Virus record (IMG/VR): IMGVR_UViG_3300037010_001702
Span: 1 to 64,000 of that record
Length of the DNA stretch: 64,000 nucleotides
Direction: 5' to 3' (one strand)
Below are positions 6,348 to 48,959 of the stretch, piece by piece. The notes beneath the pieces are model-generated. The model was not told the DNA's origin. It did not search any database and saw nothing but the letters and a program-made list of their open reading frames with translations. Numbering within the stretch: position 1 is the stretch's first letter; each line of letters begins with the position of its first letter. The translations under genes and the position numbers were made by a program.

Positions 6348-7229
6348 GTGATCTCTTTCAAACAGTTTCTAATGGAGGGCGGCAAAGCAACTGCTAAGTT
6401 TGATGTGCAGCGAGCAGAGCAAGCTGATGTAAAGGCAGCTTTAGAATTTGTATCTAAAGTGCTTGGAATTCCATTTGACACGCTCAAAAATGATCTTCTA
6501 GGTTCAACAGAGCTTACTCTTCTAGGTAAAAAGAAAGACAGCGGAGATGTAGACATCGCTATGTCACTTAAGGATTCTGACGTCAACAAAATAAATGACG
6601 AGATGCTTAAGGCAACTGGTGGAGAGGGTGACTACAATGCTGGAACAAAGGTGGGTTCCTACGCAGTTCCAGTTAACGGAAAGAAGATTCAGGTCGACCT
6701 TATGTACGTGAACAATAAGGACTGGGCTAAGTTTGCGTATCACTCTGCAATTGGAAGAGGTTCAGTCTATCCAGGTTCCGTTCGCAATATCATCATGCTT
6801 ACGGCTCTTGCACATACACAAGAGCCTGGTAAAGATTTTGTTATGCGTGATGAAGATGGTAAAGCAATCATCAGAGCATCTAAGTCTGTCAAGCTAGACT
6901 CTGGAATGGAACGTCTATTCAAGATGGCTAAAGTCAATGCTAAGACGGGAAAATACAACAAGACCATTGAAACTGTAGCTCCTGAAGAAATAGAAGCTCA
7001 CCTTAAGTCACTTGGTAAGGATGTAAAGTTCTCCAAGGATAAGGATCACACTGATGTTCCAGATGAAGTGGCAGCATTTATCTTTGGCAAGAGTGTCAAA
7101 GCTGCTGATGTTATGACAGCAGAGAATGTTATCAAGCATATCAAGAAGCTTAAGAATTCTACTGAAATTATAGAAGCTGCACGTAAAGAGCTTGAACGTC
7201 TGAAGCTACCTATCCCGAAAGAACTATGA
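6348..7229 (+). CDS. Pol-beta-superfamily nucleotidyltransferase with capsid-targeting-like leader
   Basis: LLGST...SGDVDIA...IQVDLM (GS, DxD, third D); leader MISFKQFLME. Confidence 0.7.
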   Translation: MISFKQFLMEGGKATAKFDVQRAEQADVKAALEFVSKVLGIPFDTLKNDLLGSTELTLLGKKKDSGDVDIAMSLKDSDVNKINDEMLKATGGEGDYNAGTKVGSYAVPVNGKKIQVDLMYVNNKDWAKFAYHSAIGRGSVYPGSVRNIIMLTALAHTQEPGKDFVMRDEDGKAIIRASKSVKLDSGMERLFKMAKVNAKTGKYNKTIETVAPEEIEAHLKSLGKDVKFSKDKDHTDVPDEVAAFIFGKSVKAADVMTAENVIKHIKKLKNSTEIIEAARKELERLKLPIPKEL

Positions 7230-7261
7230 AAGTCAAAGAACTATGAAAGTCAAAGAACTAT
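7218..7261 (+). repeat. 17-bp tandem repeat x2.6 at a gene junction
   Basis: AAAGAACTATGAAAGTC AAAGAACTATGAAAGTC AAAGAACTAT. Confidence 0.9.
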
Positions 7262-8253
7262 TTGAAGCAGTGAAGCGAAAGCCAGGTGATACGTATTCTG
7301 ATGATGAGCTGAAGGCCCAACAGGATGAAAGACTTAAAAGGAAAACCGCGGCCCAAAGCCAACTTATAAATTTGCTAAAAACAAAATGTAAAAAGAACTT
7401 TACTGCCTTGGTAAATGGTACGTCATCAATTCTGTATAGATCAACTAACATGCCAAATTATGTGAAGCTTGGTGATTATGTGTTTGCAGATATTACAGGA
7501 AGAACTGAACCACGCCGTTCAAAGACTGGTAGTAATCTATTCATGAACTATGCATCACAATCTCACGATTGGGCTGGATATCCTAAAAGAGAAATTTCAA
7601 ATTCAGCTACTCCAGATTATTCTGCTGCTAAACAGTTTGGCGGGGTGTGTTGGCTGATTATTCCTTACGATGACGTAGGACCATTTGCCAGATGTAAGGG
7701 CGATTTCAATTACATAGATTTAGGTGATGGAACAGAAGGTATGATAGACCGGCTTAGCATAATTGATAATGTGATCCTCACAGCCCAAAATGTGCTAAAA
7801 TCTAAGTCGAAAGAGCTAAGAGCATTAGGGCCTAAAATTTTTAGTCTTGTAGATTCTCGTATTCTTAAATTTGTTCCAGAACGCCACCGATACTCAATTG
7901 AAGAAATAGAGCAGTTATCAGATACCATTGAAAAACTGATATATGAATTTGACGAAATAGGTTCACAGACTTATAAAGATGTTCGTAACATTGTTAGCTT
8001 GAAAGAAGCGCTAGATTATTTCGAAGATGAATTTAACACACGTTCATTGGACGAGTGGCTATCAGAACATATTGCCCCTAAAGCGTTAGGAATAAAATTA
8101 TTCGATTCATATCCTGGGATGAAAATTCCTAAAAATTCTGAAGTCTGGTTTGAAGGTAGCTATGTTGCAATTGCAGCAGACCCTGGCGGATATGAGGAGA
8201 CTGATAAACTTGTATCCTCTGAATGGTTTAAGGGGATAGCAAAACAGGTCTAA
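7243..8253 (+). CDS. Putative ADP-ribosyltransferase-fold protein with capsid-targeting-like leader
   Basis: ILYRS...SATPDYSAAKQFGG.CWLIIP...NSEVWFEG, resembling the R-S-E ART layout; leader MKVKELFE. Confidence 0.45.
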   Translation: MKVKELFEAVKRKPGDTYSDDELKAQQDERLKRKTAAQSQLINLLKTKCKKNFTALVNGTSSILYRSTNMPNYVKLGDYVFADITGRTEPRRSKTGSNLFMNYASQSHDWAGYPKREISNSATPDYSAAKQFGGVCWLIIPYDDVGPFARCKGDFNYIDLGDGTEGMIDRLSIIDNVILTAQNVLKSKSKELRALGPKIFSLVDSRILKFVPERHRYSIEEIEQLSDTIEKLIYEFDEIGSQTYKDVRNIVSLKEALDYFEDEFNTRSLDEWLSEHIAPKALGIKLFDSYPGMKIPKNSEVWFEGSYVAIAADPGGYEETDKLVSSEWFKGIAKQV

Positions 8254-8310
8254 GATTTCTTGTTATTGAAGCCGTGATAAAATATACATTACAGCTTACA
8301 AGGAGCCTAC

Positions 8311-9060
8311 ATGACATTAACAACATCAGACATTCGCGACCTGTTTAAGGCTCGCTTAGCAGCAAAGCAATTCACGTCAATCAACCGTGAAGCTTCAATG
8401 ACCAACCTGGTTGGCAACACAACCATTGAAATTGTGGGCGCATCTTTTATTGCTGATGAAGATGCTATCTTCGGCGAAGTCAATTGGGATTACGTTGAAC
8501 GCGAAGAAGCTTGGTATAACTCTTTATCCTGTAATGTAAATGATTTTCCTGGCGGTGCCCCCGCCATCTGGAAAGCGGTTGCAGATAAGGACGGCTTTAT
8601 TAACAGCAATTATGGTGCTATTCTTTTTTCTGATTGGAACGGTAATCAATATGAAAACTGTGTAGCAGAACTAAAGTCTAATCCTGGCTCGCGAAGAGCT
8701 ACGGCGATTTACAATCGACCGTCAATGTGGAAAGATTACAATCTAAATGGGCGTAGTGATTTTCTATGCACTAATGCCGTCGGCTATCTTATTAGACAAG
8801 ATGAGCTTCACGCAGTTGTTCAAATGCGCAGTAATGATGCCTGGGCCGGGTATCGAAATGATAGAGCATGGCAGCAGCATATTTTAGAAAAGATGGCCGC
8901 AGAACTCTCTGTTGAGCCTGGTAATCTTTATTGGAATGTAACCTCACTCCATGTTTATGCACGGAATTATTATCTTGTAGATCACTATTCTAAAACTGGT
9001 AAATACCATATTTCTAAAGAAAAATACAAAGAACTTTATCCAGAGTCTGAATATATCTAA
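8311..9060 (+). CDS. 42: dCMP hydroxymethylase (T4 gp42 homologue)
   Basis: TIEIVGASFIADE, INSNYG, NPGSRR, RPSMW.DYN..G.SDFLCTN, MRSND..GYRND.AWQ, SLHVYAR.YYLVDH; colinear with T4 gp42, with the dCMP-specifying Asp. Confidence 0.95.
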   Translation: MTLTTSDIRDLFKARLAAKQFTSINREASMTNLVGNTTIEIVGASFIADEDAIFGEVNWDYVEREEAWYNSLSCNVNDFPGGAPAIWKAVADKDGFINSNYGAILFSDWNGNQYENCVAELKSNPGSRRATAIYNRPSMWKDYNLNGRSDFLCTNAVGYLIRQDELHAVVQMRSNDAWAGYRNDRAWQQHILEKMAAELSVEPGNLYWNVTSLHVYARNYYLVDHYSKTGKYHISKEKYKELYPESEYI

Positions 9061-9086
9061 TCACGTTTTCGCAGGTACTCGAGAAG

Positions 9087-9122
9087 AGTAGATTGAGACG
9101 AGTATTACCGTCTCAATCTACT
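9087..9122. repeat. Perfect 14-bp inverted repeat (hairpin)
   Basis: AGTAGATTGAGACG-agtattac-CGTCTCAATCTACT. Confidence 0.85.
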
Positions 9123-9330
9123 GATGAAGACTGCGTAGTTTATTGGATACATGATAGCACGTGTGTTCGTTCAATAACTGATGAGTATGTTGTCGTAACT
9201 ACGGTAAAGCGTTATTGAGCACATAAGCTAGAACATCTTAGGTCTGGTAGATTTCCAAAAGAGGCAGTCATGGATATTATTCGTGACGGTAATATTGCAA
9301 GATGTTACCTTTATAGGGATCATCGTGATT
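9123..9330 (+). pseudogene. Decayed GIY-YIG endonuclease
   Basis: Frame reads DEDCVVYWIHDSTC...DEYVVVTTVKRY*AHKLEHLRSGRF...; in-frame TGA at 9216. Confidence 0.5.
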
Positions 9331-9374
9331 GTTTAGCATCCGTTGGCATATTTAAACCTAAAAAAGAGAAAATA

Positions 9375-9572
9375 ATGGAACAAGTCTTCCTATCCCGTCG
9401 CAACCTTCTTTTGCTTCTTGATAAGCTTGACAAGAAGAAGCCCGGCGATCCTATTATTGCTGCATCTATTATCAAACATGACGGGCAAGGTGAGGATTTC
9501 AATCAAACAATTCCAATCATCTGCGTAACAGCAGTCGAAGATGAAATTTATTATGGAGCAAATCATGTCTGA
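9375..9572 (+). CDS. Hypothetical protein, tandem paralogue 1
   Basis: MEQVFLSRRNLLLLLDKLD...IIK.D...VTAVEDE.YY; start reassigned from 9270. Confidence 0.7.
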   Translation: MEQVFLSRRNLLLLLDKLDKKKPGDPIIAASIIKHDGQGEDFNQTIPIICVTAVEDEIYYGANHV

Positions 9573-9801
9573 TGTTGAACATGTCTTCCTATCTCGCCGT
9601 AATCTGTTGACCCTGCTTAACAAGCTAGACCGCAAAGCTACAGGTGATAATTCTACGCTTTGCACTATCATTAAGAATGATGATGCCCACACCAAGTATC
9701 CCCAATCTTGCCCAACAATAGTGGTTACTGCTATTGATGATGACGAGTATTACGACACTCGCGAAGCAGGCAAAGTTCACCCCCTGGATACACCAAAATG
9801 A
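9565..9801 (+). CDS. Hypothetical protein, tandem paralogue 2
   Basis: MSDVEHVFLSRRNLLTLLNKLD...IIK.D...VTAIDDDEYY; GGAG RBS. Confidence 0.75.
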   Translation: MSDVEHVFLSRRNLLTLLNKLDRKATGDNSTLCTIIKNDDAHTKYPQSCPTIVVTAIDDDEYYDTREAGKVHPLDTPK

Positions 9802-10397
9802 GATTAAAAGAACTCCGTGAAATGGCAGTCAGGAATCCTATGGAAATGAATTTGACGGATTCTCAGCTTGATGAATTTTCTAAACTGTTATCAACTTCAA
9901 CGGATGTAAAACAAATAAATGAAAATAAGACAGTGAAGATCAAGCACAGTGATGGTAAAATTTACTATTCTCTTTGGCTTAGTGAGATACTTGTTTCCTT
10001 TAGCGTATGTTCTTTCATAACTATTGCTGCTAAGAAATATCTTAGTATTTTATTTTCTCATACACTAAAGGAATTTCAGCGAAAAGGTTATTCCCAAGAA
10101 CTTATTTGGGAATTACATCTAATCATTGAAGAACCAATTTACATCGGCGGATCATTTACAACTGCAGGTGAAGGTTCTACAGTCAAACTAGCAAATTATC
10201 TTGAAAAGATTAGAAGTATAAAACTAAAGATGATCGATAATAAATCGGGCGAAATTTTGGATTATGATAATGGCCTATTAATGAAAAAACCAAAAATTGG
10301 GCTATTAATAGAAAGTGCTGGAATGTTTGAAGCATTTACTGATGCTGGCCTTGTAAAATTTTGGTTGAATGACAATATAGATTTTAGTGAGACATAG
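9798..10397 (+). CDS. GNAT-like acetyltransferase with capsid-targeting-like leader
   Basis: Acetyl-CoA motif EFQRKGYSQELI; leader MRLKELRE. Confidence 0.55.
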   Translation: MRLKELREMAVRNPMEMNLTDSQLDEFSKLLSTSTDVKQINENKTVKIKHSDGKIYYSLWLSEILVSFSVCSFITIAAKKYLSILFSHTLKEFQRKGYSQELIWELHLIIEEPIYIGGSFTTAGEGSTVKLANYLEKIRSIKLKMIDNKSGEILDYDNGLLMKKPKIGLLIESAGMFEAFTDAGLVKFWLNDNIDFSET

Positions 10398-10398
10398 A

Positions 10399-10560
10399 AT
10401 GCAAGTTAAAGATCCGCGTAAAGCGCACTTACACATCTCTCTCGTAAAGAGTGTCTTTCGTGTTTTAGCAGGTGCTGTTATAATGAGCCAGATGTTTTAT
10501 ACTGGTGGTTTGCTTATCATCATTGCTGAAGTTCTTGGCGTCTTGGAAGAGATTGTGTGA
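10399..10560 (+). CDS. Small membrane protein (53 aa; below ORF-track cutoff)
   Basis: MQVKDPRKAHLHISLVKSVFRVLAGAVIMSQMFYTGGLLIIIAEVLGVLEEIV. Confidence 0.65.
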   Translation: MQVKDPRKAHLHISLVKSVFRVLAGAVIMSQMFYTGGLLIIIAEVLGVLEEIV

Positions 10561-10864
10561 CCTGTGAATGTCAAGTCTGTAAAGATATTGCCCCGCAGGA
10601 AACGTATTATAATTAATGGAAATGAGGAACAACGCCTCCAAGTTTTCAGCGAGCCGTTTGACCGCATTGAAGATGCTGAGACAGATGTAACATACTATAA
10701 AGCTATTTTGCATGGCTAAATGGTAAAGCAATCTTAGAACACTGGCTGAAGCTGTTGATCTGCACAAACACATCCAAAGTAAAAATTGCTCGGGATAGTG
10801 ACAGAAAATGCAAGTGGTAGCCAAAGTCTGATGACTTTCAAATTTACAAAGTGGTACTTATTAA

Positions 10865-13257: not shown

Positions 13258-13830
13258 ATGACAATAAATGCTATCCTCGTGGAGGGTTTGGACAGATTGG
13301 GCAAGAGTACATTAGTAGAAAGTATTCAACAAGAGCTCGGATATTTCCAAGTCATTCATTTTGGGAAGCCACAACACTTGAAGTTCTATGAGCAAAAAGA
13401 CAACAATGGATTTGTTTCGACTGGGGAGAGCGCGTATCTTTACCAGCACGCCTCATTCGACAACATGTTCAGAATCCTTAATTCAACAGCAAGAGTTATC
13501 TTTGATCGAGCACATCTCGGAGAATGCGTCTACTCACCAATTTATCGCAACTATTCTGGTGATTACGTGTATGATCTTGAGTGCTATCATGGCATGGATC
13601 ATAATGACTCTACCAAACTCATACTCTTGGTAGAGAATATGTCTATCTCTGAACACTTTGTTGACGATGGTTTATCCTTCGACATTACAAAGCGTCAGCA
13701 AGAGCAAGACCTTTTCGAAGAAGCGTTTCATAAATCAATCATTAAGAACAAACAGATCATCTGTGTAACAGACCCTGCAACGGGCAAGTTCCGCTCTAAA
13801 GAAGACATTCTAAAAGAAGCTTTACAATGA
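13258..13830 (+). CDS. Thymidylate-kinase-like dNMP kinase (candidate hm-dCMP kinase)
   Basis: VEGLDRLGKST P-loop; IFDRAHLGE.VY. Confidence 0.8.
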   Translation: MTINAILVEGLDRLGKSTLVESIQQELGYFQVIHFGKPQHLKFYEQKDNNGFVSTGESAYLYQHASFDNMFRILNSTARVIFDRAHLGECVYSPIYRNYSGDYVYDLECYHGMDHNDSTKLILLVENMSISEHFVDDGLSFDITKRQQEQDLFEEAFHKSIIKNKQIICVTDPATGKFRSKEDILKEALQ

Positions 13831-14438
13831 AATTGAATGAAATTTTACGTGTAGCTTCTTTATCCGATTTAGAATCAAAAATTAAACTCAGCCAAGAACA
13901 GATTAATAATGCTAAAAGTTTAGGCTTTATGGCACATAGTTTTGAAGTGTTTGAAATTAATGGTGAAGTCGGGGGACTGAAAGTATTTTATGCGAAAAAG
14001 GAAGAGAATATTATTGGTCAGTTAGCTCTTGAAAAAACTGAAATTTGCAAAATTAGTGGGTATATCTGTAGACGTTCATATATTATTCCATCAGAAGAAA
14101 AAAAAGGATATGGTTCAGATTTTTATGTCTTCATAAGAAAATATCTCAAGTCACCAATGTTTGCCATGTTCAGTGATGAATCGCAAACACCTGATGGAAT
14201 AAACCTGTGGAAATCTTTAAGCAAAAGATTTGATGTTAAAGTGTTAAACATTCAGACTGGCGAAATAAAATCCCGAAAAGATGTTAATGATGATATAATA
14301 TACACTAATGATGCTGACAAATCAGCAGATTTTATGCTAATGATTGAATCTGCCAAAGCATTTGCTATCCCCACACAGTCGTATATTAAGGGAAGCATCT
14401 TAACACCATATGCATTATTTGAAGATGGAGATTATTAA
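13827..14438 (+). CDS. GNAT-like acetyltransferase with leader
   Basis: EEKKGYGSDFY...FSDESQTPDGINLWKSL; leader MKLNEIL; resembles 9798. Confidence 0.55.
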   Translation: MKLNEILRVASLSDLESKIKLSQEQINNAKSLGFMAHSFEVFEINGEVGGLKVFYAKKEENIIGQLALEKTEICKISGYICRRSYIIPSEEKKGYGSDFYVFIRKYLKSPMFAMFSDESQTPDGINLWKSLSKRFDVKVLNIQTGEIKSRKDVNDDIIYTNDADKSADFMLMIESAKAFAIPTQSYIKGSILTPYALFEDGDY

Positions 14439-15990: not shown

Positions 15991-15991
15991 A

Positions 15992-20668: not shown

Positions 20669-21643
20669 ATGAAACTACTTGTACTTGCAAACGCGCACCA
20701 TGAACTTATCAAGGAAGCTACGGTTGGAACTGCCAGCGTAGCCCTAGCCATGGAGAAGATGATCAAGTTTATCCAACGAAAGATGGATGAAAAGCTCATC
20801 AGGATTCCTGGAATTGAGCATTTTCACAATTCCACTGACAGCGGGTATGGTATTCGCTATGTATTTTCAGGTACAACGCGCTGTCTTCGCTTCAACTGGG
20901 GTTCTGAAGCTTCAGCTGGTAAGACTAGTGAGATTCACTCCATCGACATCTTCAATGGTAAGTCTGCTGATCCAACGTTCAGCATTCACTGCAAGGGTAT
21001 TTCCTTCGCGCAATCACTGCCAGCTCTTGTAGCAATTCTTCATTCTCCAACAATTGGTCATGTTCGTGCCTTCCCAGTTAGCCCTGTTGAAGCTTTGTCT
21101 GAGTCAGTTATCATGGAAGTTGCGCGGGATGCATTCTCGCCTGAAGCTGCTCTCAATGACTTCCTCGGAAAACTCGCAGCAGGCAAGACATTCACCCGTT
21201 CTGAATTCATTGGTTCCTACCACATTATCAATGCCGGTATCTTTGACACAGTCTTCAGGGACTTCAATGACAGGTTTCAAATTGATGCCAGGAGAGTTTC
21301 GCTAAAGCCAGGTTCGAAGATCGACTCTCTTAAGGACTCTATTCTTTCAAAGGCAGGAGTCATCACTGTAACCCAAGGTGGTACAGATGAATCCTTCATG
21401 AAGACCAAGCAGGAAGAGCAAGTTGAAAAGGATACCGCTGAACGCATTCCATTTGGTGACACCCTTGAACACTTGGAAGGTCTCGTAACAGGTACCATAA
21501 AGGGGGCATTCAACGCTCTCTTTGTTGCTGGTAAGGGTGGATCGTTTTCAGGTTCAACTCTTGTAAATGTTATGGTTAATAATTCATCAATAAATTTAAA
21601 TGATAATCATCAAACCGAAAACAAGATTGCCAATCATAATTAA
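20669..21643 (+). CDS. AAA-ATPase N-terminal half (291-aa N-extein) plus 33-aa N-intein
   Basis: Ends NALFVAGKGG|SFSGSTLVNVMV...; TAAATA at 20628. Confidence 0.8.
   Translation: MKLLVLANAHHELIKEATVGTASVALAMEKMIKFIQRKMDEKLIRIPGIEHFHNSTDSGYGIRYVFSGTTRCLRFNWGSEASAGKTSEIHSIDIFNGKSADPTFSIHCKGISFAQSLPALVAILHSPTIGHVRAFPVSPVEALSESVIMEVARDAFSPEAALNDFLGKLAAGKTFTRSEFIGSYHIINAGIFDTVFRDFNDRFQIDARRVSLKPGSKIDSLKDSILSKAGVITVTQGGTDESFMKTKQEEQVEKDTAERIPFGDTLEHLEGLVTGTIKGAFNALFVAGKGGSFSGSTLVNVMVNNSSINLNDNHQTENKIANHN
21542..21640 (+). mobile_element. Split intein N-fragment (Ser1)
   Basis: SFSGSTLVNV matches intein block A (C/S-F-x-G-x-T-x-V), directly after half a Walker A motif. Confidence 0.75.
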
Positions 21644-23764: not shown

Positions 23765-24595
23765 ATGGAAAAGAAATATGTAAGAGCATCAAACAGAAAA
23801 CATCACATAGTTTATAAAACGACATGTATAGAAACAAATGCATTCTATATAGGCATGCACAGCACTGATAATCTAAATGATGGTTATCTGGGAAGTGGGG
23901 TTAGGCTTAGAAAATCGATTAGAAAATATGGTGAAGCTGCACATAAGACTGAAATCTTATTCGAATTAGAAAATAGACAGGCTGCATCAGATAAAGAAAG
24001 AGAACTTATTACTGCTGAACTAAGAAAGGATCCAAAGTGTATGAACTGCGGACCTGGTGGTGAAGGCTATTATGATAGACCAGCTACTAAAGAAGAAACG
24101 TCAGCTAAACTTTCTAAAGCTTCTAAGCAATATGTTCGCACTAAAGAGTGGTATGAAAAAGTAGTAGCTACTCGAAAAGCAAACAACAGTTATACTCATA
24201 CCCCAGAAGCAAGAGAAAAGATTAGAGCTTCTCTAACCGGTAAAACTTTAACTGAAGAGCACAAGAAGAAAATATCAGAAGGTGGTACTGGGCAGAAGAG
24301 AACAGAAGAAACATGTTTGAATATCTCTAAGTCTCTAAAGGGAAAGAAGTTTAAATCTGGGGTAGATAGAAAACCTGTATCAGAAGAAGCTAAAGAGAAT
24401 ATTAGACAAGATCGCATTGGTAAAAAGCACTCTGAAGAAGCCAAATCTAATATGCGAAAACCTCATAAAAAGCCAAAAACCCGCCAATGTACTGTAGATG
24501 GTATAAATATCTATCAATCAGTAAGTCAAATGGTTAAAGCTTTAGGTTCTGGTCAAAATAGTCGGAGATCACCAAATTTTAGGTGCATAATATGA
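23765..24595 (+). CDS. Seg-like GIY-YIG homing endonuclease with NUMOD3 repeats
   Basis: IVYKTT...FYIGMHST.NLNDGYLGSG; HTPEAREKI, TEEHKKKIS, HSEEAKSNM. Confidence 0.9.
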   Translation: MEKKYVRASNRKHHIVYKTTCIETNAFYIGMHSTDNLNDGYLGSGVRLRKSIRKYGEAAHKTEILFELENRQAASDKERELITAELRKDPKCMNCGPGGEGYYDRPATKEETSAKLSKASKQYVRTKEWYEKVVATRKANNSYTHTPEAREKIRASLTGKTLTEEHKKKISEGGTGQKRTEETCLNISKSLKGKKFKSGVDRKPVSEEAKENIRQDRIGKKHSEEAKSNMRKPHKKPKTRQCTVDGINIYQSVSQMVKALGSGQNSRRSPNFRCII

Positions 24596-24897
24596 AAACT
24601 TCATTCAAACAGTTCGTTCAAGAAGGTCCTATACTTGATAAGGTGAAGAAATTTTTCAAGAAGAAAGAAGTTATTCCTACTGACCCACGAATGAAGCCTG
24701 CTTTCATTCAAGCAGGTGGTGAAAAGAAGTATGACATCATGGGATGGCAAATCGGATGGTTTTGTTGTCAAGCAGATCCATCAGGAGATCCAAAAGAAAT
24801 TTTCAACAAGATGTATTATGGTGGCGGAAGCCCTATCTCATTTGATGAGAAGTCTTTTTACGCTGGATTTAAAACTTGCAGAGAGATGGCATCCTAA
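24592..24897 (+). CDS. Small protein with capsid-targeting-like leader
   Basis: MKTSFKQFVQE|G; start reassigned to ATG 24592. Confidence 0.65.
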   Translation: MKTSFKQFVQEGPILDKVKKFFKKKEVIPTDPRMKPAFIQAGGEKKYDIMGWQIGWFCCQADPSGDPKEIFNKMYYGGGSPISFDEKSFYAGFKTCREMAS

Positions 24898-24898: not shown

Positions 24899-25930
24899 AT
24901 GATTTCCTTCAAGCAATTTATTACCGAAATGGGCGGTTGGTCTAAGACTATTACGCAAGACGTAAAGCTTACCCCAGCTACAGCAAAGAAAGCATTAGCT
25001 AATATGCCTAAATTCGAAAAAGAGTTTAATGCTTATTTGAAGACGCACGATTATGCTCCTATTAAAATTGGTAAGCCAATCGGTTCAACTGCATATCTTG
25101 AAAGAGATTTGAAGGAGCATCCAGATAAAGAATATGGAGACATTGATATTATCTTTTCAATGCCACGTATTCAAGGGACAACTGAGAGCAAGAATCAATC
25201 CCTATATCGTCAAATGGTTATCTCATTCATTAAGGATGAAAAACCTTCTTACATTTACGATGGTGGTTCTGAAAATGGAACTAATATTACCGTCTCAGTA
25301 GGAGATGATAAGTGGGCGCAAGTAGATTTAGTAGCAGCATTTACTGAGACTGAGGATTGGACTACCCATCGTATGACCCCCGAGTATGGATTAAAGGGAG
25401 CTCTAATGGGATTCCTTTATGCTTCATTAAGTGAGTTATTAAATGTAAGTATTGGCACTTCTGGTGTTCAAGTAAAACATATTGATGGTGAAATGGTTCC
25501 ATTTAAGAAAATAAAGGTTGATAGCGTTAATACTATTACAACTGATATTGGACATTTTGCTTTAGATACTTTCAATTACCTATACAATCGCACTCATGCT
25601 ACTGGAAGCAAACCGAAAATTGCTCCACTACTTAATTCAAACCCCGGTATGAAGAGAGGAGATATTAAATTCGACGATTTAGCAAATGCTGTTCGCGGAA
25701 TGGGCAAGTCTTTTGAGCTTAATAATATGTGGGGCCAGGGCGATTTGAAACATATTAAAGACTACTCTGATTTTATATCGAAAGTCAAGGCATCCTATAT
25801 TGCTAAGGCAGAAGATGCAGCAAATGCATCGAAATTTGAGAAAGCAGCTACTGTTGATGCGAAGAATAGAGCTGAAGCTACAAAAGAGATGCTTAGATCT
25901 AAGTCAAAAGAACTCATAGCAAAACTGTAA
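24899..25930 (+). CDS. Second Pol-beta-superfamily nucleotidyltransferase with leader
   Basis: MISFKQFITE; PIGST...YGDIDII...AQVDLV; start reassigned from 24716. Confidence 0.7.
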   Translation: MISFKQFITEMGGWSKTITQDVKLTPATAKKALANMPKFEKEFNAYLKTHDYAPIKIGKPIGSTAYLERDLKEHPDKEYGDIDIIFSMPRIQGTTESKNQSLYRQMVISFIKDEKPSYIYDGGSENGTNITVSVGDDKWAQVDLVAAFTETEDWTTHRMTPEYGLKGALMGFLYASLSELLNVSIGTSGVQVKHIDGEMVPFKKIKVDSVNTITTDIGHFALDTFNYLYNRTHATGSKPKIAPLLNSNPGMKRGDIKFDDLANAVRGMGKSFELNNMWGQGDLKHIKDYSDFISKVKASYIAKAEDAANASKFEKAATVDAKNRAEATKEMLRSKSKELIAKL

Positions 25931-45204: not shown

Positions 45205-45616
45205 TCTTGAAATCTTTAGACATCTCCGCCGACAGTTCTTTGATAGAACTACAGCCCAGTTAGTTCCAGGTATTAATGGAGGAATATCCTTCATGCTTAA
45301 GCCTACAGCTGAAAAGCAGTATGATTACTGGATCTATATTTGTCCTAAGGATATTCAATTCTCTACAAAGCAAGCTGTAAAATCCCTGCGTGATACAGCT
45401 GCTAGAGACGCAATGCCTTGGGGTACTATCAATTTAGATGGTACTCCAATCATTGATCAATTAATCGGATCTGTCTTAGCTTCTAGACACGGACTTCCAT
45501 CTGAAGTATCAGCTTATGTTAGAGAAATAATTGGCTTCTCTAATTATTCAGAAGCTCGCATGTCTGAATTTAAAGATAACGCGGCGGCGAATAAAGCTAT
45601 CTATGAAACAAATTAA
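45194..45616 (+). CDS. Hypothetical protein
   Basis: MTDNLEIFRHLRR...; start reassigned. Confidence 0.65.
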   Translation: MTDNLEIFRHLRRQFFDRTTAQLVPGINGGISFMLKPTAEKQYDYWIYICPKDIQFSTKQAVKSLRDTAARDAMPWGTINLDGTPIIDQLIGSVLASRHGLPSEVSAYVREIIGFSNYSEARMSEFKDNAAANKAIYETN

Positions 45617-46092
45617 ATTTGGTGACATTCTTGATGCCCAATATGGCATCATCGTTCATGGGTGCAATGCACAGGGTGTTATGGGTTCGGGCACAGCTCT
45701 TCACATCAAGTAGAGATATCCGCAAGCCTATGGTGATTATGTTGAAGCCTGTCAGAAAAACAAGCCTGCTGATCTAATGGGACAGGTTATTCTATCGCCC
45801 CGTCACTCCAAGCCTGTTCATAGCAAACTGCATAACACAGCTCAACTACGGCAGAATGGGAACGAAGTACGTTAGCTACCAAGCTGTTCAGAAGTGCTTT
45901 GAACAGGTAGCGTCAGCGTCAGAAAGTATTCAATACCTCGATCCAGATGGCTGCAGGATGACTATTCACTACCCTTTAATAGGTGCTGGTTTAGGAGGTG
46001 GTGATTTGGCTATCATCTCAGACATCATTGAAGCAGTATTTGCTAAGCCAGAACACAAGGATAAGCCTCGAACCCTTTGGATTTACGAGCAG
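45603..46092 (+). pseudogene. Macrodomain (ADP-ribose hydrolase-type) gene with nonsense codon and +1 frameshift
   Basis: GDIL...IVHGCNAQGVMGSG.A..IK*RYP (TAG 45711); shift at CCCC 45798-45801; then FIANCITQ..YG...YPLIGAGLGGGD. Confidence 0.8.
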
Positions 46093-46137
46093 GATTTCAT
46101 AAATAGTTTTATCGATTCTGCTCAGATAAACTCAAAA

Positions 46138-47838
46138 ATGTATCTCTTAAAACTTCTTCAGGAAGCAAGTTCCCTTAAAATTTCTGATCTCAAGAAGGCT
46201 ATCAAGAAGGATAAGCGTGCAGCTATTATCTTCGACAAGGACTTGTCACTTGAGAACATCAGAGACAAGGACGGTTTTCTTGCAACCCTTAAGTACTACT
46301 TCTTCAACAACCAAGAAGTAAGAGATTTCATTGCAGCACGTCACAGCATCAAGGAAATTAACAAGTTAGAGTTTGACGATCTTAAGAAGAAGCAGGGCAA
46401 GGATCTTACCCAAGCAGACCTTTATCAAATTCAGGACATGGTTAACATTGTTTTCAAGGAGTACTCCGCAGTAGATCGCGGATCAATGTCAGCTGAACTC
46501 AAGCGTGAGCTTAGTAAGTGGATCAATACATCAGGTCGCTACTTTAACTTACCAAAGTGGGCTTTAGCTGAGCTGAAAAGCCTTCCAGGGGTTAGGCCGA
46601 ACAAGAGAGTCCTTCTTTACCGTGGTCTGCTGTTTAACAACAGCGATCTTGGGTCGCGCGAAAAGTACGATGGCACCCTTGAGATTGGTGATGGTCTAAA
46701 ATTCCTAAAGACAATACGTGAAGGTGGACGTGAAGTTGACCTTAAGTGGGACCGTCCTTCCAGCTGGACAACTGACAAGAGCATTGCGATCCAATTTGCA
46801 AAGTACGGACCTGCATCAAGTCACGTTAGTGCTATGATGGGATGGTTTGACAGTCAAATCGAAAAGCACGAGATAGATGGAGCCCTTGGCTACGTTATTT
46901 CGACATTCGCGAATCCAGAAGACATACTTTTGGACACCCAGTTAGTAACGCTTAATGGCAAGCATGGTAATGAAGGTGAGATGCTTCTTCAGCCAGGCGA
47001 ATACCTTACCAGAGTCGTTCACAAGTTCACTGTCAATGGTGAAGTTGACCCATCGATGAGCACGGCTGCTGATGAAGACCTGCCAGTCAGCAAAGCTATC
47101 AAGGCGACCGAAGAGCTTTCACAAACCTTTAAGGTTAGCGATCTCATAGACGTATCAGCTAAGGAATTAAAGCAGAACATTTGGGGTTCGAGTTCAGTAA
47201 AAATTCTTAACAATACCTCCCTCTTTAAGAAGCTTATTCTCAACAGTGCAACGACCGCAACGCTTCACGCCTATGATAAGCTGCTTGACTTCTACAAGCA
47301 CAACCTTGATTATCTGCAAGATGATGATCTACTCAATGACAAGTATGCTCACAGTGATGAGCTTCGTGAAAAGGTTCAGTCGCTTAAGAAGGTAGTTACG
47401 CGTTTCAGAAACACCATCAATCATTCAAAGTTCAAGTCAGATAAAAATCCAAATGCTAAGGGTAAGATGCACGAACTTTCCAGTGAAGAGTACCGTGCAA
47501 CCATTAAGTGCTACGATCTTGCTGACCTTGAAAAGCAGCTACTACTTCAGGGAAGAATAGTTGATCGTGAGGGACAAGTTGCATTTGGTAATCTTGCTAG
47601 CGCGCTGGGCATTGATCTTCCTGTACCAGCAGGGTTCGCAATGTTTGGCTCGGCAAAGCAGAAACCGGTCATCGATGAAGTAGTAAATGCCTTCTACAAT
47701 AAGATTGGTGTAGCAAAACCAGGTGATCTAAATGAAGCAATAAAGATGATGTTGAACCTAATTCGTAAGGCGTACCGCAATTACGAAATGATTCAGATGC
47801 TTGAACAATTACAATCTGACATTCAGGATATTAAATGA
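46138..47838 (+). CDS. ADP-ribosyltransferase-domain protein with leader (Alt-like role possible)
   Basis: LLYRGL...SSWTTD..IA.QFA...NEGEMLL (R-S-ExE); leader MYLLKLLQE; ATAAATA at 46099; the ORF-track start 45856 is read-through from the macrodomain remnant. Confidence 0.7.
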   Translation: MYLLKLLQEASSLKISDLKKAIKKDKRAAIIFDKDLSLENIRDKDGFLATLKYYFFNNQEVRDFIAARHSIKEINKLEFDDLKKKQGKDLTQADLYQIQDMVNIVFKEYSAVDRGSMSAELKRELSKWINTSGRYFNLPKWALAELKSLPGVRPNKRVLLYRGLLFNNSDLGSREKYDGTLEIGDGLKFLKTIREGGREVDLKWDRPSSWTTDKSIAIQFAKYGPASSHVSAMMGWFDSQIEKHEIDGALGYVISTFANPEDILLDTQLVTLNGKHGNEGEMLLQPGEYLTRVVHKFTVNGEVDPSMSTAADEDLPVSKAIKATEELSQTFKVSDLIDVSAKELKQNIWGSSSVKILNNTSLFKKLILNSATTATLHAYDKLLDFYKHNLDYLQDDDLLNDKYAHSDELREKVQSLKKVVTRFRNTINHSKFKSDKNPNAKGKMHELSSEEYRATIKCYDLADLEKQLLLQGRIVDREGQVAFGNLASALGIDLPVPAGFAMFGSAKQKPVIDEVVNAFYNKIGVAKPGDLNEAIKMMLNLIRKAYRNYEMIQMLEQLQSDIQDIK

Positions 47839-48959
47839 AACTACTCCAATTTCTTATAGAGCGAGCGCCTACCGAGGCAGCAAAGGCTGCAGAATTTCTT
47901 GTCCCATTCATCTGCAATAAGGCAGGTGTTGAGGAGATGAGAGGCAAGCGCGGTTCAGACTATAACATTTCTAACCAATACCAGATTCGTGTTAAGCCAA
48001 CTGACAAGGATGATGAGCTTGACCTAATCCTAGCTCGCATTGAGAAGGTTCTTAAGACACCAGATGCAAAGAAGCTTGGTATCTCTAATGCCAAGACAAA
48101 TGATCTATCAGCCAATTCAAGCAAGTTTTCAAGCGTTTCATTTGAGTGTGAAGGAATTATCTACGATGTAGTCGTAGCTCGGGGTGGTAACAAAGGTGAG
48201 AACTTTGAGAAGGATATACTAGTAAAGATGGACAACTTGGTTGGTGGAATTGAAAGCTCTGAAGAAGCAGAAGCTGCTTTCAAGGCCCTTGAAAAGGTAG
48301 ACCCCGTCTTTAAGATCACGAACATCGCGAATGTTACAGCTCGTTCTGGTTCCACTAAGCGCTCGGGAGACTTATCACCAGATGATATTGGTAAGATCAT
48401 CGCTGATGTTATCGTCGAGCTAAAGAATGGAGATAAGAAGTACATCTCAATAAAGAATCAAGATGGTAAAACTGTTGGGCAGTTCGGCCTATCAGCTGCA
48501 TTCAATGACGACTTAACTGTCAACACTAACTCTTCAGAATGGAAGACGTGGCTAGCTCCATTTGGTCTTGACCCAAAGAAAATTACCGCTGGTTTGGAAG
48601 CATCACAAAGTGGTGATGACCTTGACTTTGATGATGTTGAGGAAATGTCAAAGAAGGTAACGTCAGAATCAGCTGTTCACAAGATTATGCAGAAAATGTG
48701 GGGTTCGAACTACTACTATCTCCGCCACACGGGTAAGGACTTTAAGGCGCTAAAGATCGATGCTGACTACGTCAATAAATCACTTCTCAAGGACCTTGTT
48801 GTGACGAAGATTTGTTATCCGTCAAAGGATAGAAAGCAGATCAACATCTACCTGCATAGCGTCACTATGAACTTTAAGCTTGAGGTTAGAAACCCAAGAG
48901 GAAAGGGATCAGCTAAACCTACCCAGATTCAGCTGACAGTGATGAAGGGTGCTAAGTAA
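47835..48959 (+). CDS. PD-(D/E)xK-like nuclease with leader
   Basis: GNKGENFE...IADV......YISIK; leader MKLLQFLIE. Confidence 0.55.
   Translation: MKLLQFLIERAPTEAAKAAEFLVPFICNKAGVEEMRGKRGSDYNISNQYQIRVKPTDKDDELDLILARIEKVLKTPDAKKLGISNAKTNDLSANSSKFSSVSFECEGIIYDVVVARGGNKGENFEKDILVKMDNLVGGIESSEEAEAAFKALEKVDPVFKITNIANVTARSGSTKRSGDLSPDDIGKIIADVIVELKNGDKKYISIKNQDGKTVGQFGLSAAFNDDLTVNTNSSEWKTWLAPFGLDPKKITAGLEASQSGDDLDFDDVEEMSKKVTSESAVHKIMQKMWGSNYYYLRHTGKDFKALKIDADYVNKSLLKDLVVTKICYPSKDRKQINIYLHSVTMNFKLEVRNPRGKGSAKPTQIQLTVMKGAK

What the first reader, a model, noticed from the sequence alone, without database searches (positions are those of the whole stretch)
6348..48959. Dispersed family of enzymes with T4 internal-protein-like leaders: a putative packaged and injected effector set
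Seen: unrelated enzymes share a short basic/hydrophobic leader, nearly always ending in [LIV]xE: MISFKQFLME (6348, NTase), MKVKELFE (7243, ART-like), MRLKELRE (9798, GNAT), MKLNEIL (13827, GNAT; partial match), MKLLVLANAHHELIKE (20669, split ATPase), MKTSFKQFVQE (24592), MISFKQFITE (24899, NTase), MYLLKLLQE (46138, ART) and MKLLQFLIE (47835, nuclease). The units starting at 6348, 20669 and 46138 follow TAAATA late boxes. Known: T4 internal proteins carry a capsid-targeting sequence (MKTYQEFIAE) that the prohead protease removes after Glu, and T4 injects the ART Alt. Inference: these enzymes are made late, packaged, processed and delivered with the DNA to modify host targets (nucleotidylation, ADP-ribosylation, acetylation) before phage transcription begins.
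Basis: partly seen in the sequence, partly recalled or inferred. Interest (0 to 1): 0.75.

Follow-up and report, generated by a model that had tools for sequence, protein, structure and literature searches.

The report
Capsid-targeting leaders on phage enzymes
A giant T4-related phage puts a ten-residue N-terminal tag, almost the same as the T4 capsid-targeting sequence, on several unrelated enzymes, which most likely sends them into the phage head for delivery with the DNA: a known mechanism carrying new cargo.

Summary
Partly confirmed. The real motif is M-x(1-3)-F-K-Q-F-[LIV]-x-E, found only at N-termini. It is near-identical to the T4 capsid-targeting sequence MKTYQEFIAE.

- Clear leaders: 6348, 24592, 24899, 47835.
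- Supported through relatives: 7243, 46138.
- Undecided: 9798, 20669.
- Rejected: 13827.

A 239-kb contig of the same phage (100% identical) encodes a T4 gp21-type prohead protease and a gp55-like late sigma homologue. It holds about eleven more leader genes, nine of them clustered at 161-172 kb. A T4-late-like ATAAATA box precedes 6348, 20669, 24592 and 46138.

In the nearest cultured relative, RsoM2USA, a protein starting MKTFKQFLSE is a published virion band. In IMG/VR the leader heads at least 50 unrelated protein families.

Cargo checks:
- 6348 and 24899 are distant paralogues that look like minimal family-X polymerases.
- 46138 is an R-S-ExE ADP-ribosyltransferase.
- The GNAT and ATPase labels are unsupported.

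Packaging, cleavage and injection are inferred, not shown. This is a new member of a known kind.

The parts
6316..6322 (+). ATAAATA late-promoter-like box, 25 bp upstream of 6348. A second box on the minus strand (6271-6277) faces the tail-fibre gene 2189-6247.
   Evidence: In the 239-kb genome, 55 of 81 boxes lie 5-120 bp upstream of a same-strand start (5.8 expected). They precede most of the recognisable structural genes.
6348..6377 (+). Leader MISFKQFLME (GTG start). The predicted cleavage is after Glu10, before GGKA.
   Evidence: PSSM 23.3 bits. About 100 of 120 orthologues carry M[IKL][TS]FKQFLxE directly before GGxA. Mean pLDDT of residues 1-10 is 45 in a model with overall mean 91.5.
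6348..7229 (+). Leader-bearing nucleotidyltransferase resembling a minimal family-X polymerase (palm plus thumb). The mature form would be 283 aa, pI 9.0.
   Evidence: Near-invariant GS, D67xD69 and Q115-D117. The top eight VIA hits are all Pol beta, lambda, TdT, PolX or ASFV PolX, with Z 8.2-9.4 over residues 16-263. Foldseek to Pol lambda gives E 1e-4.
7243..8253 (+). Gene with the short leader variant MKVKELFE (7243-7266). It is an ART-like paralogue of canonical-leader genes and is probably co-transcribed with 6348 (14-bp gap).
   Evidence: BLASTP to the gene at 165879 (MISFKQFLSE), E 3e-4. The RsoM2USA tandem paralogues start MTFKAFLQE, MTTFKEYLTE and MKLEDLFE. In 9 paralogues only R66 (of [LF][YF]RG), R116 and P141 are invariant. 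The PSSM gives only 2.9 bits, so this is probable, not certain.
24502..24509 (+). TATAAATA box, 82 bp upstream of 24592, inside the 3' end of a homing-endonuclease-like ORF.
24592..24897 (+). Small leader-bearing protein. The leader is MKTSFKQFVQE (24592-24624). The mature form would be 90 aa, pI 9.0; function unknown.
   Evidence: PSSM 18.6 bits. Apart from the leader it has no similarity to 6348 or 24899. An 82%-identical orthologue carries a different leader, MKLSELYEQHIEE, before the same mature start.
24899..25930 (+). Second leader-bearing nucleotidyltransferase. The leader is MISFKQFITE (24899-24928). It is a distant paralogue of 6348.
   Evidence: hhalign of the two families: probability 96.4%, E 1e-9. 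Invariant G62-S63, D81xD83 and Q141-D143. Orthologues have interchangeable leaders, or none, before GGW.
45603..46137 (+). Broken macro-domain gene. It has an in-frame TAG at 45711-45713 and a frame change in about 45790-45860. Its last frame runs into 46138. It is not part of the leader set.
   Evidence: PHROG 335 matches residues 5-95 of ORF 45856-47838.
46099..46105 (+). ATAAATA box, 32 bp upstream of 46138.
46138..47838 (+). ADP-ribosyltransferase of the R-S-ExE class (566 aa). It has a short N-terminal stretch MYLLKLLQE (46138-46164) ending L-Q-E before AS.
   Evidence: 87 homologues start at this Met. Y161-R162-G163, S208/W210 (S209 in at least 90%) and E279xE281 are invariant. E9 and S11 are invariant behind N-terminal stretches of variable length. 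The AF2 model has pLDDT 87, with residues 1-7 below 50. The top 14 VIA hits are all R-S-E ARTs, Z 6.3-7.3, over residues 114-305.
47835..48959 (+). Leader-bearing protein of unknown fold family, with a weak restriction-endonuclease lead. The leader is MKLLQFLIE (47835-47861). Its start overlaps the stop of 46138 by 4 bp.
   Evidence: PSSM 13.0 bits. Homologues carry MLTFKQFLTE, MTSFKEFLTE, MRISELLQE or MRFKTFLIE before the same [RK]AP junction, and others start at the mature end. Atlas gives MspI/HaeIII-like leads with TM 0.39-0.54.
20669..21643 (+). Undecided candidate. MKLLVLANAHHELIKE before A, with an ATAAATA box at 20627-20633.
   Evidence: A 75%-identical orthologue keeps MKLLLLANARHEFVTE before A and keeps the box. 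The PSSM gives -2.4 bits. There is no family hit.
9798..10397 (+). Undecided candidate (MRLKELRE). The start overlaps the upstream stop by 4 bp.
   Evidence: PSSM -0.2 bits. Only identical copies were found. No Pfam or PHROG hit.
13827..14438 (+). Rejected candidate (MKLNEIL, no terminal Glu).
   Evidence: It lies between a dNMP-kinase-like gene and a T4 beta-glucosyltransferase-like gene. It is downstream of the best sigma70-like promoter, at 12832-12859. The PSSM score is strongly negative.

Best explanation
**What it is.** The window belongs to a jumbo myovirus of the T4 superfamily. Its nearest named relatives are Ralstonia phage RsoM2USA and Xanthomonas phage XacN1. The phage uses a T4-type capsid-targeting sequence.

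**The tag.** It is an amphipathic N-terminal stretch of 8-13 residues. The consensus is M-x(1-3)-F-K-Q-F-[LIV]-x-E, with a shorter interchangeable variant M-[KR]-h-x-E-h-h-E.

**Proposed mechanism.**
1. The tagged proteins are made from late promoters.
2. The tag docks them on the scaffolding core of the prohead.
3. The phage's gp21-type prohead protease cuts after the terminal Glu.
4. The mature proteins stay in the head with the DNA and leave with it at the next infection.

**Cargo in the window.**
- Two family-X-polymerase-like nucleotidyltransferases (6348, 24899).
- A 10-kDa basic protein (24592).
- An Alt-like R-S-ExE ADP-ribosyltransferase (46138).
- Its downstream neighbour (47835).
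- Probably an ART-like paralogue (7243).

**Shown here.** The motif and its restriction to N-termini. Its modularity. The protease, the late sigma homologue and the promoter boxes. The folds of two cargo proteins.

**Inferred, not shown.** Docking, cleavage, retention in the head, injection, and what the enzymes do in the host.
For: 1. **The leader matches the T4 CTS.** T4's is MKTYQEFIAE, cleaved once; any protein fused to it is packaged (PMC8442874). The T4 peptide itself scores 7.7 bits on the PSSM built here.
2. **It is confined to N-termini and enriched**. Codons differ synonymously between copies, so the constraint is on the peptide.
3. **It is modular.**
   - 100 complete IMG/VR ORFs with the leader fall into 50 clusters that BLASTP does not link. 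One locus (L074) has five such genes in tandem.
   - Within orthologue families the leader is swapped or absent, while the junction before the mature start is kept.
4. **The machinery is present.** A contig 100% identical over 87,996 bp encodes:
   - a Peptidase_S77 (gp21-type) protease at 146265-146879;
   - a homologue of XacN1's annotated late sigma factor at 131554-132027.
   
   RsoM2USA, Atu_ph07 and Phosso have the protease too, as do 3 of 4 large leader-bearing contigs.
5. **Late-promoter boxes.** ATAAATA boxes sit before structural genes and before 6348, 20669, 24592 and 46138.
6. **More leader genes next to structural genes.** They lie among the tail-sheath, tail-tube and terminase genes at 161-172 kb. 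They include a GNAT and a Zeta-toxin-like kinase.
7. **Experimental support in a relative.** RsoM2USA ORF89 (MKTFKQFLSE..., 28.56 kDa) is one of ten abundant virion bands identified by LC-MS/MS (PMC8504454).
8. **Precedent for a short propeptide.** T4 Alt loses only six N-terminal residues, at I-T-E (PMC5694885). That matches the short L-Q-E end of the 46138 family.
9. **The leader is not part of the fold.** It has low model confidence in both AlphaFold models.
Against: - There are no proteomic, transcript or N-terminal data for this phage, which is uncultured.
- The head genes are not in the window. They come from a longer contig that is identical only over the shared 88 kb.
- The RsoM2USA evidence is one gel band, with no N-terminus mapped.
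- The virion-packed lipase of XacN1 (ORF279) shows no such leader at its annotated start.
- The box also precedes a thymidylate synthase gene (43698), so a box does not prove strictly late expression.
- 46138, 7243, 9798 and 20669 do not score above background on the motif alone.
- 6348 and 24899 share ancestry, so their common leader is not an independent event.
Confidence: 0.75

Rival explanations
1. The leader does target proteins to the prohead core, but they are assembly or scaffold components. They would be degraded or kept for head or DNA functions, for example a polymerase-like enzyme that services the packaged genome. They would not be injected effectors acting on host targets.
For: - The protease itself and small head-module proteins start with similar peptides, MKQQLLIE and MLIKQLLCINE.
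- The closest structural relatives of 6348 are DNA polymerases, not protein-modifying enzymes.
Against: - The cargo includes ARTs, a GNAT and a Zeta-like kinase. In IMG/VR it includes SAM lyase and polyvalent-type ARTs. These are typical host-directed or anti-defence activities.
- T4 proteins bearing the CTS are cut once and retained, and the internal proteins are injected (PMC8442874; PMC12373910).
Confidence: 0.12
2. The shared N-termini are a generic feature of phage gene starts with no targeting role. They could reflect a translation-favouring sequence or a common amphipathic helix, and the resemblance to the T4 CTS would be chance.
For: The loose rule fits 30% of N-termini. Peptides such as MKLKELRE are common starts of unrelated proteins (own knowledge). 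7243, 9798, 20669 and 46138 score at background.
Against: - The strict core has no internal occurrence and a 16-fold N-terminal excess at 10 bits or more.
- In-frame spacing dominates in IMG/VR, 104 against 2-7.
- Codons vary synonymously between copies.
- The junction is kept while leaders are swapped or absent in orthologues.
- The large leader-bearing genomes tested mostly encode a gp21-type protease: 3 of 4 IMG/VR contigs, and RsoM2USA.
Confidence: 0.05
3. The leader is a sorting or regulatory tag for another destination or fate, such as membrane, periplasm, another phage compartment, or a degron. It would not target the capsid.
For: No direct localisation data exist. The phage is a jumbo phage, and some jumbo phages sort proteins into compartments (own knowledge).
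Against: - The peptide is short and amphipathic and has no hydrophobic core like a signal peptide (direct reading).
- It is near-identical to an experimentally defined capsid tag (PMC8442874).
- One bearer is a virion protein in RsoM2USA (PMC8504454).
- The genes sit behind late boxes and within structural modules.
Confidence: 0.05

Closest known systems
[quoted passage not shown]
   Same: - A roughly 10-residue N-terminal leader ending [LIV]-x-E, shared by otherwise unrelated proteins.
- A gp21-type protease in the genome.
- Tandem arrays of such genes (L074; the 161-172 kb cluster).
- T-even ip genes were themselves found by detecting the signal sequence (PMC12373910).
   Different: - The consensus here is F-K-Q-F rather than Y-Q-E-F, and there is a shorter interchangeable variant.
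- The host phage is a jumbo phage of the RsoM2USA/XacN1 group, estimated at about 350 kb.
- Most cargo here is 20-63 kDa and several members are demonstrable or likely enzymes. T4 Ip1-3 are non-enzymatic inhibitors of GmrSD-type restriction (PMC12373910).
T4 Alt, the packaged and injected ADP-ribosyltransferase
   Same: 46138 is an R-S-ExE ART with a short N-terminal stretch ending h-x-E. Alt is processed at ITE-6 (PMC5694885). 46138 sits behind a late-type box.
   Different: There is no detectable sequence similarity to any record in the phage collection and no Pfam ART hit. The flanking domains differ: an N-terminal helical domain and a large C-terminal helical domain. The target is unknown.
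Ejection proteins of phiKZ-like and SPN3US giant phages, with propeptides removed by the prohead protease
   Same: Many head-internal proteins carry N-terminal propeptides cleaved after Glu by a gp21-related protease. Paralogues share identical N-termini (PMC5694885).
   Different: Those phages use S/A/G-x-E motifs and a family S80 protease. Their propeptides are often long. They have no FKQF-type 10-mer.
MuF-fused and polyvalent virion effectors (Iyer, Burroughs, Aravind and co-workers; PMC9503650)
   Same: The idea is the same: ARTs, Macro and other enzymes are delivered from myovirus heads.
   Different: There, packaging is by fusion to a structural domain (MuF or portal). Here it is by a short removable leader.
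Family-X DNA polymerases, in particular the minimal palm-plus-thumb ASFV Pol X
   Same: The catalytic GS...DxD...D palm, and palm-plus-thumb structural similarity at Z 8.2-9.4 over about 160 residues.
   Different: There is no Pfam or PDB sequence match. No 8-kDa or fingers domain is evident at 283 aa. Activity and substrate are untested. No leader-tagged phage enzyme of this kind is known to me (own knowledge).

Membership tests
T4-type CTS-bearing head-internal proteins | An N-terminal leader of about 10 residues resembling MKTYQEFIAE and ending [LIV]-x-Glu | tested here: met
   Met for 6348, 24592, 24899 and 47835 (13.0-23.3 bits; the T4 CTS scores 7.7). Not met on motif alone for 7243, 9798, 20669 and 46138. 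Failed for 13827.
T4-type CTS-bearing head-internal proteins | The leader is shared by proteins that are otherwise unrelated | tested here: met
   24592 compared with 6348 and 24899 shares only the leader. The 7243 group, 47835 and 46138 are further unrelated bodies. IMG/VR gives 50 unrelated clusters. 6348 and 24899 are distant paralogues.
T4-type CTS-bearing head-internal proteins | The same phage encodes a gp21-type (Peptidase_S77) prohead protease | tested here: met
   PF03420 matches at 146265-146879 of the 100%-identical 239-kb contig, at 85.4 bits against a cut-off of 27. It is absent from the 88-kb fragment itself.
T4-type CTS-bearing head-internal proteins | Made late, together with head proteins | tested here: inconclusive
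   ATAAATA boxes precede the units and most of the recognisable structural genes, and a gp55-like sigma homologue is present. There are no transcript data, and one box also precedes a thymidylate synthase gene.
T4-type CTS-bearing head-internal proteins | Present in virions, with the leader removed after Glu | not testable with these tools
   The only support is indirect: RsoM2USA ORF89 (MKTFKQFLSE...) is a virion band by LC-MS/MS (PMC8504454). No N-terminus was mapped.
T4-type CTS-bearing head-internal proteins | Ejected into the host with the DNA | not testable with these tools
   No data.
R-S-E clade ADP-ribosyltransferases (Alt/VIP2/C3-like), for 46138 | The catalytic motifs Arg, Ser-Thr-Ser and Glu-x-Glu, in that order | tested here: met
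   In 47 homologues Y161-R162-G163, S208/W210 and E279xE281 are invariant. S209 is conserved in at least 90%.
R-S-E clade ADP-ribosyltransferases (Alt/VIP2/C3-like), for 46138 | ART fold | tested here: met
   The model has pLDDT 87.3. The 14 best VIA matches are all R-S-E ARTs, Z 6.3-7.3, with 125-140 residues aligned over 114-305. Foldseek's best hit is C3bot1, but only at E 0.35. The Z values are moderate. The case rests on fold and motifs together.
R-S-E clade ADP-ribosyltransferases (Alt/VIP2/C3-like), for 46138 | Match to a curated ART sequence family | tested here: not met
   No Pfam ART family is matched by any of 47 members, even at E up to 1. A profile search against PDB sequences gives nothing.
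Family-X polymerase / Pol-beta-type nucleotidyltransferases, for 6348 and 24899 | A palm with hG[GS], DxD and a third acidic residue | tested here: met
   6348 family: G52-S53, D67xD69, D117. 24899 family: G62-S63, D81xD83, D143.
Family-X polymerase / Pol-beta-type nucleotidyltransferases, for 6348 and 24899 | Palm-plus-thumb architecture like Pol X, rather than only the NTase core | tested here: met
   The top eight VIA hits are family-X polymerases, Z 8.2-9.4, with 159-174 residues aligned. TUTases, CD-NTases and MenT align only about 90 core residues, at Z 5-7.7. Only the 6348 model was folded.
Family-X polymerase / Pol-beta-type nucleotidyltransferases, for 6348 and 24899 | Match to curated Pol X or NTP_transf sequence families; template-directed polymerase activity | tested here: not met
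   No Pfam hit and no PDB sequence hit. Activity is not testable here. I therefore file it as 'Pol X-like fold', not as a member.
GNAT acetyltransferases, for 9798 and 13827 | Match to a GNAT family model | tested here: not met
   9798: no hit even at E up to 5. 13827: Acetyltransf_4 at E 0.012 and 16.1 bits, against a cut-off of 24.3. A true GNAT with a leader does exist outside the window, at 166813 (Acetyltransf_1, 23.9 bits against a cut-off of 20.7).

The most novel reading that the evidence does not exclude
The FKQF-type leader, with its short variant, may be a tag used across the T4 superfamily, from cyanophages to 350-kb jumbo phages. If so, the set of head-packaged and injected proteins could be read from sequence alone. 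That set would hold many unrelated, mostly uncharacterised effector families. It would include a conserved, packaged polymerase-X-like enzyme pair that acts on nucleic-acid ends at the very start of infection. No enzyme of that kind is known to me to be delivered from a phage head.
Probability: 0.45. Interest if true: 0.7.

Novelty: new member of a known kind. Interest (0 to 1): 0.58.

Why it matters
Injected phage proteins act before any phage gene is expressed. They are a known source of anti-restriction and host-takeover functions: T4 Ip1-3 block GmrSD-type enzymes and Alt modifies RNA polymerase. They are hard to find, because they share nothing but a short tag.

Three results make the tag useful as a practical search key:
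- It is conserved in a recognisable form far outside the T-even phages.
- It is swapped between orthologues as a module.
- It heads at least 50 unrelated protein families in the first 120 IMG/VR loci alone.

For this phage the tag predicts about 15-18 packaged proteins. Among them are two Pol X-like nucleotidyltransferases, several ART or ART-like proteins, a GNAT and a Zeta-toxin-like kinase. The phage also appears to glucosylate its DNA, so it is a likely target of type IV restriction.

All of this can be tested in the cultured relative RsoM2USA.

Tried and rejected
**Searches that found nothing**
- Megablast of 20 kb against the phage collection: no match.
- tblastn of 24899 and of 46138 against the phage collection: no match.
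- Pfam on the nine proteins: nothing. Lenient Pfam on 8 proteins (five of the nine plus three cluster genes) and on 47 ART homologues: nothing useful.
- PDB sequence and profile searches for 46138, 6348 and the families A2, A3 and A4: only spurious low-score hits or none.
- The search for related loci for 7243 and 9798 returned only identical copies, so orthologue leaders could not be examined for them.
- The paper library holds no paper with MKTFKQF, MKSFKQF or MISFKQF. This does not show that the variant is undescribed elsewhere.

**Tests that were uninformative**
- Sigma70-type promoter and terminator scans of 6001-26000 are at chance level (64 against 58.2, 16 against 12.3). Only the site at 12832-12859 stands out. 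A TTGACA 17 bp upstream of ATAAAT before 6348 was noted by eye but not called by the scan, so an early promoter there is not excluded.
- Complex prediction of the protease with residues 1-60 of the 6348 protein gave no verdict (score 0.02). It is not evidence either way.
- XacN1: its virion-packed lipase ORF279 shows no leader at the annotated start. Only looser leader-like starts appear near its head genes. I did not pursue XacN1 further.

**Ideas rejected**
- That the trio's leader is simply inherited within one paralogous family. This holds only for 6348 and 24899, not for 24592, 47835 or the ART-like group.
- That 45856 is the start of the ART gene.

**Procedural notes**
I rebuilt the alignment without them.
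- No alternative genetic code was used, and the broken macro-domain gene was not read through.

Full report
**What the window is.** The 64-kb window is the reverse complement of most of an 88,308-bp IMG/VR contig rated 24% complete. It has no close DNA relative among cultured phages. Its topoisomerase II large subunit is 50% identical to that of Ralstonia jumbo phage RsoM2USA (344 kb). The next hits are Xanthomonas phages X1 and BUDD, Pseudomonas phage pf16 and Xanthomonas phage XacN1. Other genes recognised:
- T4-type tail-fibre paralogues, topoisomerase II subunits and a helicase.
- A thymidylate-synthase-like gene, a dNMP-kinase-like gene, a T4 beta-glucosyltransferase-like gene and a thymidylate synthase.

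A second IMG/VR contig of 239,441 bp is 100% identical over 87,996 bp, and its coordinates equal window coordinates. I used it as the rest of the same genome.

**The observation.** The nine peptides are there. '^M.{2,14}[LIV].E' fits 30% of the 122 called N-termini and 16% of internal windows.

A much sharper motif sits inside the set. 6348 (MISFKQFLME), 24899 (MISFKQFITE) and 24592 (MKTSFKQFVQE) share F-K-Q-F-[LIV]-x-E. This core occurs at 3 of 122 N-termini and nowhere internally. In RsoM2USA it occurs at 4 of 473 N-termini and nowhere internally.

BLASTP finds nothing in common between these three proteins except the leader. Profile comparison, however, shows that 6348 and 24899 are distant paralogues: hhalign probability 96.4%, E 1e-9, about 21% identity. 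The codons of the leaders differ synonymously, so the constraint is on the peptide, not the RNA.

- Of 132 matches, 104 had the in-frame spacing M-x-x-FKQF. Each out-of-frame spacing gave 2-7.
- Nearly all in-frame matches lie at the start of an ORF.
- One hundred complete ORFs fall into 50 clusters that BLASTP does not connect once the leader is removed.
- One locus, L074, has five such genes in tandem.
- Pfam recognises among them polyvalent-type and HYD1 ARTs, an S-adenosylmethionine lyase, a Zn protease, a cytidylyltransferase-like enzyme, a lytic transglycosylase and HEAT/LRV repeat proteins.
- The most common body, a 106-aa protein starting MKSFKQFISE, occurs in 135 T4-like cyanophage records. 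In S-SCSM1 it lies between 'virion protein' genes, next to the large terminase gene.

**Leaders are exchanged at a fixed junction.**
- 6348 family: about 100 of 120 orthologues carry M[IKL][TS]FKQFLxE directly before GGxA. The remote homologue in Sinorhizobium phage Phosso starts at the GG.
- 24899 family: the mature part starts GGW. It is preceded by MISFKQFITE, MRFSTFLLE, MKVYELLQE, MKVRELLE, MKLQQLFE or MKLKELFE plus a second site, or by nothing.
- 47835 family: relatives carry MLTFKQFLTE, MTSFKEFLTE, MRISELLQE or MRFKTFLIE before the same [RK]AP junction. Others begin at the junction.
- 24592: an 82%-identical orthologue has MKLSELYEQHIEE in place of MKTSFKQFVQE, before the same G(P)ILDKVKKFF.
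- RsoM2USA: three tandem paralogues begin MTFKAFLQE, MTTFKEYLTE and MKLEDLFE. They are homologous to 7243 and to the canonical-leader gene at 165879.

So the short form M-[KR]-h-x-E-h-h-E, as in 7243's MKVKELFE, is an interchangeable variant of the FKQF form. Taken alone it cannot be told from background: 7243 scores 2.9 bits and 9798 scores -0.2 bits.

**A quantitative list.** I built a PSSM from 89 distinct orthologue leaders and ran it over the 295 called genes of the 239-kb genome. Twelve N-termini score 10 bits or more, against 0.75 expected from the internal rate. Besides 6348, 24592, 24899 and 47835 (13.0 bits), the list holds:
- 165879 (MISFKQFLSE) and 167394 (MRFKEFITE).
- 168135 (MQLSFKNYLLE), a Zeta-toxin-like P-loop kinase (Pfam E 1.4e-13).
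- 166813 (MSNISFKEFLAD), a GNAT above the Pfam cut-off.
- 171712 (MSYKPSFRQFIEE).
- The protease gene itself (MKQQLLIE).

161320 (MRPSFKEFLNE) and 168866 (MISFKQFLSE) were missed only because my gene caller chose other starts. Nine leader genes lie together at 161-172 kb, among the tail-sheath, tail-tube and terminase genes. The window's members are therefore the scattered minority of a set of about 15-18.

**The machinery.** The longer contig encodes:
- A Peptidase_S77 (T4 gp21-type) prohead protease at 146265-146879, flanked by portal, scaffold-like and major capsid genes.
- A homologue of XacN1's annotated late sigma factor.

RsoM2USA, Atu_ph07 and Phosso also encode the protease, as do three of four large IMG/VR contigs that carry the leader.

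The heptamer ATAAATA, the core of the T4 late promoter TATAAATA (own knowledge), occurs 81 times. Fifty-five copies lie 5-120 bp upstream of a same-strand start, against 5.8 expected. They precede most of the recognisable structural genes, though not the portal (144585) or major capsid (149255) genes. They also precede 6348 (with 7243 behind it), 20669, 24592 (with 24899 behind it) and 46138 (with 47835 overlapping its stop). One box also precedes a thymidylate synthase gene, so a box is not proof of strictly late expression.

**What is known, and the one piece of experimental support.** In T4 the internal proteins are cut once, next to the roughly 10-residue CTS MKTYQEFIAE. Any protein fused to the CTS is packaged (PMC8442874). 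[quoted passage not shown] Alt loses just six residues, at I-T-E (PMC5694885). T-even ip genes were found by their signal sequence, and Ip1-3 inhibit distinct GmrSD enzymes (PMC12373910).

For RsoM2USA, ten abundant virion bands were identified by LC-MS/MS. One is ORF89, 28.57 kDa (PMC8504454). ORF89 is the gene at 66030-66791. Its product starts MKTFKQFLSE and has a calculated mass of 28.56 kDa. Its neighbours ORF88 and ORF90 have leader-like starts too, and the ORF254-258 cluster holds four more (ORF254, 255, 256 and 258).

**The cargo.**

*46138.*
- 87 homologues of 529-590 aa all start at this Met.
- Y-R-G, S-x-W (from S-S-W-T-T-S) and E-x-E are invariant in a 47-sequence alignment.
- The AlphaFold model has pLDDT 87.3, with only residues 1-7 below 50.
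- Its 14 best VIA matches are all R-S-E ADP-ribosyltransferases (C3, Vis, HopU1, Certhrax, ExoS, iota-like, C2-I, VIP2, SpvB, ART2.2), at Z 6.3-7.3 over residues 114-305.
- Foldseek is weak: C3bot1 at E 0.35. No Pfam ART model matches.
- I accept it as an ART on motifs plus fold.
- In the family, Glu9 and Ser11 are invariant behind N-terminal stretches of 7 to 21 residues that always end [LI]-x-E. One member starts MKLQDIFE and carries a second site. This fits a processed propeptide like Alt's, but it does not prove one.

*6348.*
- The model has pLDDT 91.5, with the leader at low confidence.
- It matches family-X polymerases best. Foldseek to Pol lambda gives E 1e-4. VIA gives Z 8.2-9.4 for Pol beta, TdT, Pol lambda, Thermus PolX, Leishmania Pol beta and ASFV PolX, with about 160 residues aligned.
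- Other nucleotidyltransferases align only with the roughly 90-residue core.
- The catalytic GS, DxD and D are conserved in both the 6348 and 24899 families.
- A nucleic-acid 3' end is thus a likelier substrate than a host protein. This part is inference.

*Others.*
- 47835 has only a weak restriction-endonuclease lead.
- 7243 belongs to a paralogous group with an invariant [LF][YF]RG arginine (R66), plus R116 and P141. The KR..S..T and C-terminal E.W motifs are only majority-conserved. 'ART-like' is plausible but unverified.
- 9798 has no family support.
- 13827 is weakly GNAT-like. It lies among DNA-modification genes behind a strong sigma70-type promoter. I drop it from the set.
- 20669 has no family hit. 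Its orthologue keeps both the box and an N-terminus ending HEFVTE before A, which recalls T4's QEFIAE. I leave it undecided.

**Conclusion.** The best explanation is a T4-type capsid-targeting and processing system carrying a large, partly enzymatic cargo in a jumbo phage. I give about 0.75 for the core set being packaged through this leader. I give less for injection and for host-directed action of each enzyme.

The mechanism is known. New here are the lineage, the FKQF consensus with its short variant, the size of the set and some cargo types, notably the Pol X-like pair.

Nothing in this report rests on an alternative genetic code. The broken macro-domain gene upstream of 46138 is described only.

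Noticed in passing
window 45603-46137: A broken macro-domain gene. It has an in-frame TAG at 45711-45713 and a frame change in about 45790-45860. Its last frame runs without a stop into the ART gene, which makes ORF 45856-47838 look like a 660-aa fusion. An eraser-type domain decaying next to an ART is curious. Assembly error is not excluded, although two other contigs have 100%-identical copies of other genes of this phage (7243, 9798, 20669, 24592).
   Followed up: partly
G005 (coordinates equal window coordinates) 161320-172507: The main cluster of leader-bearing genes lies outside the window, among the tail-sheath, tail-tube and terminase genes. It has nine genes. One is a GNAT (166813) and one is a Zeta-toxin-like kinase (168135). 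Three are ART-like paralogues (161320, 165879, 168866).
   Followed up: partly
window 8311-9060, 13258-13830, 14439-15560, 43698-44621: A thymidylate-synthase-like gene (a possible pyrimidine hydroxymethylase), a dNMP-kinase-like gene, a T4 beta-glucosyltransferase-like gene and a true thymidylate synthase. The phage probably has glucosylated, hypermodified DNA like T4. Injected inhibitors of type IV restriction would then be useful to it.
   Followed up: no
window 21600-22655 and 23765-24595: Homing-endonuclease-like ORFs: a DUF559/Vsr-like C-terminus with an HNH PHROG hit, and a NUMOD3 motif. The second contains the TATAAATA box that precedes 24592.
   Followed up: no
whole genome, e.g. window 6271-6277 (-), 6316-6322, 20627-20633, 46099-46105, 48970-48976, 51097-51103: ATAAATA behaves as the late-promoter core. 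In the 239-kb genome, 55 of 81 copies lie 5-120 bp upstream of same-strand starts (5.8 expected). The total count is no higher than base composition predicts. A gp55-like sigma homologue lies at 131554-132027 of the longer contig.
   Followed up: yes
window 2-6247 (-) and 51157-61948 (+): A large family of tail-fibre or decoration-like paralogues with repeated domains (1352, 1235, 864, 479 and 466 aa, and others), placed on both sides of the early-gene block.
   Followed up: no
window 9270-9572 / 9565-9801, and 22657-23709 / 27959-28924: Two pairs of paralogues of unknown function, 52% identical over 60 aa and 35% identical over 239 aa. The second pair has a weak AAA_16 hit, and 22657 has a late box.
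   Followed up: no
L173:1501-1782 and L174:1501-1767: Distant homologues of the 24592 body (42-43% identical) sit at the C-terminal end of longer ORFs. They are preceded by G-V-[AT]-E before G, which looks like an internal protease site. The small protein may also be released from a larger precursor in other phages.
   Followed up: no
RsoM2USA (MG752970.1) 62335-67654 and 164332-167473: Clusters of leader-like starts next to published virion proteins. ORF88 starts MKLHEISE, ORF89 MKTFKQFLSE (a virion band) and ORF90 MSFKTFLE, beside the ORF86 virion ATPase-like protein. ORF254 starts MTTFKEYLLE (P-loop kinase), ORF255 MNQTFKQFLTE, ORF256 MKFSDYILE and ORF258 MRLKQFLME, around the virion band ORF257.
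   Followed up: partly
G005 146265-146879 and RsoM2USA 259073-259705: The prohead protease itself begins with a leader-like peptide: MKQQLLIE before H in this phage, MIKQQILIE before E in RsoM2USA and MKQAILVE before H in XacN1. This may be its own core-targeting or autoprocessing site.
   Followed up: no
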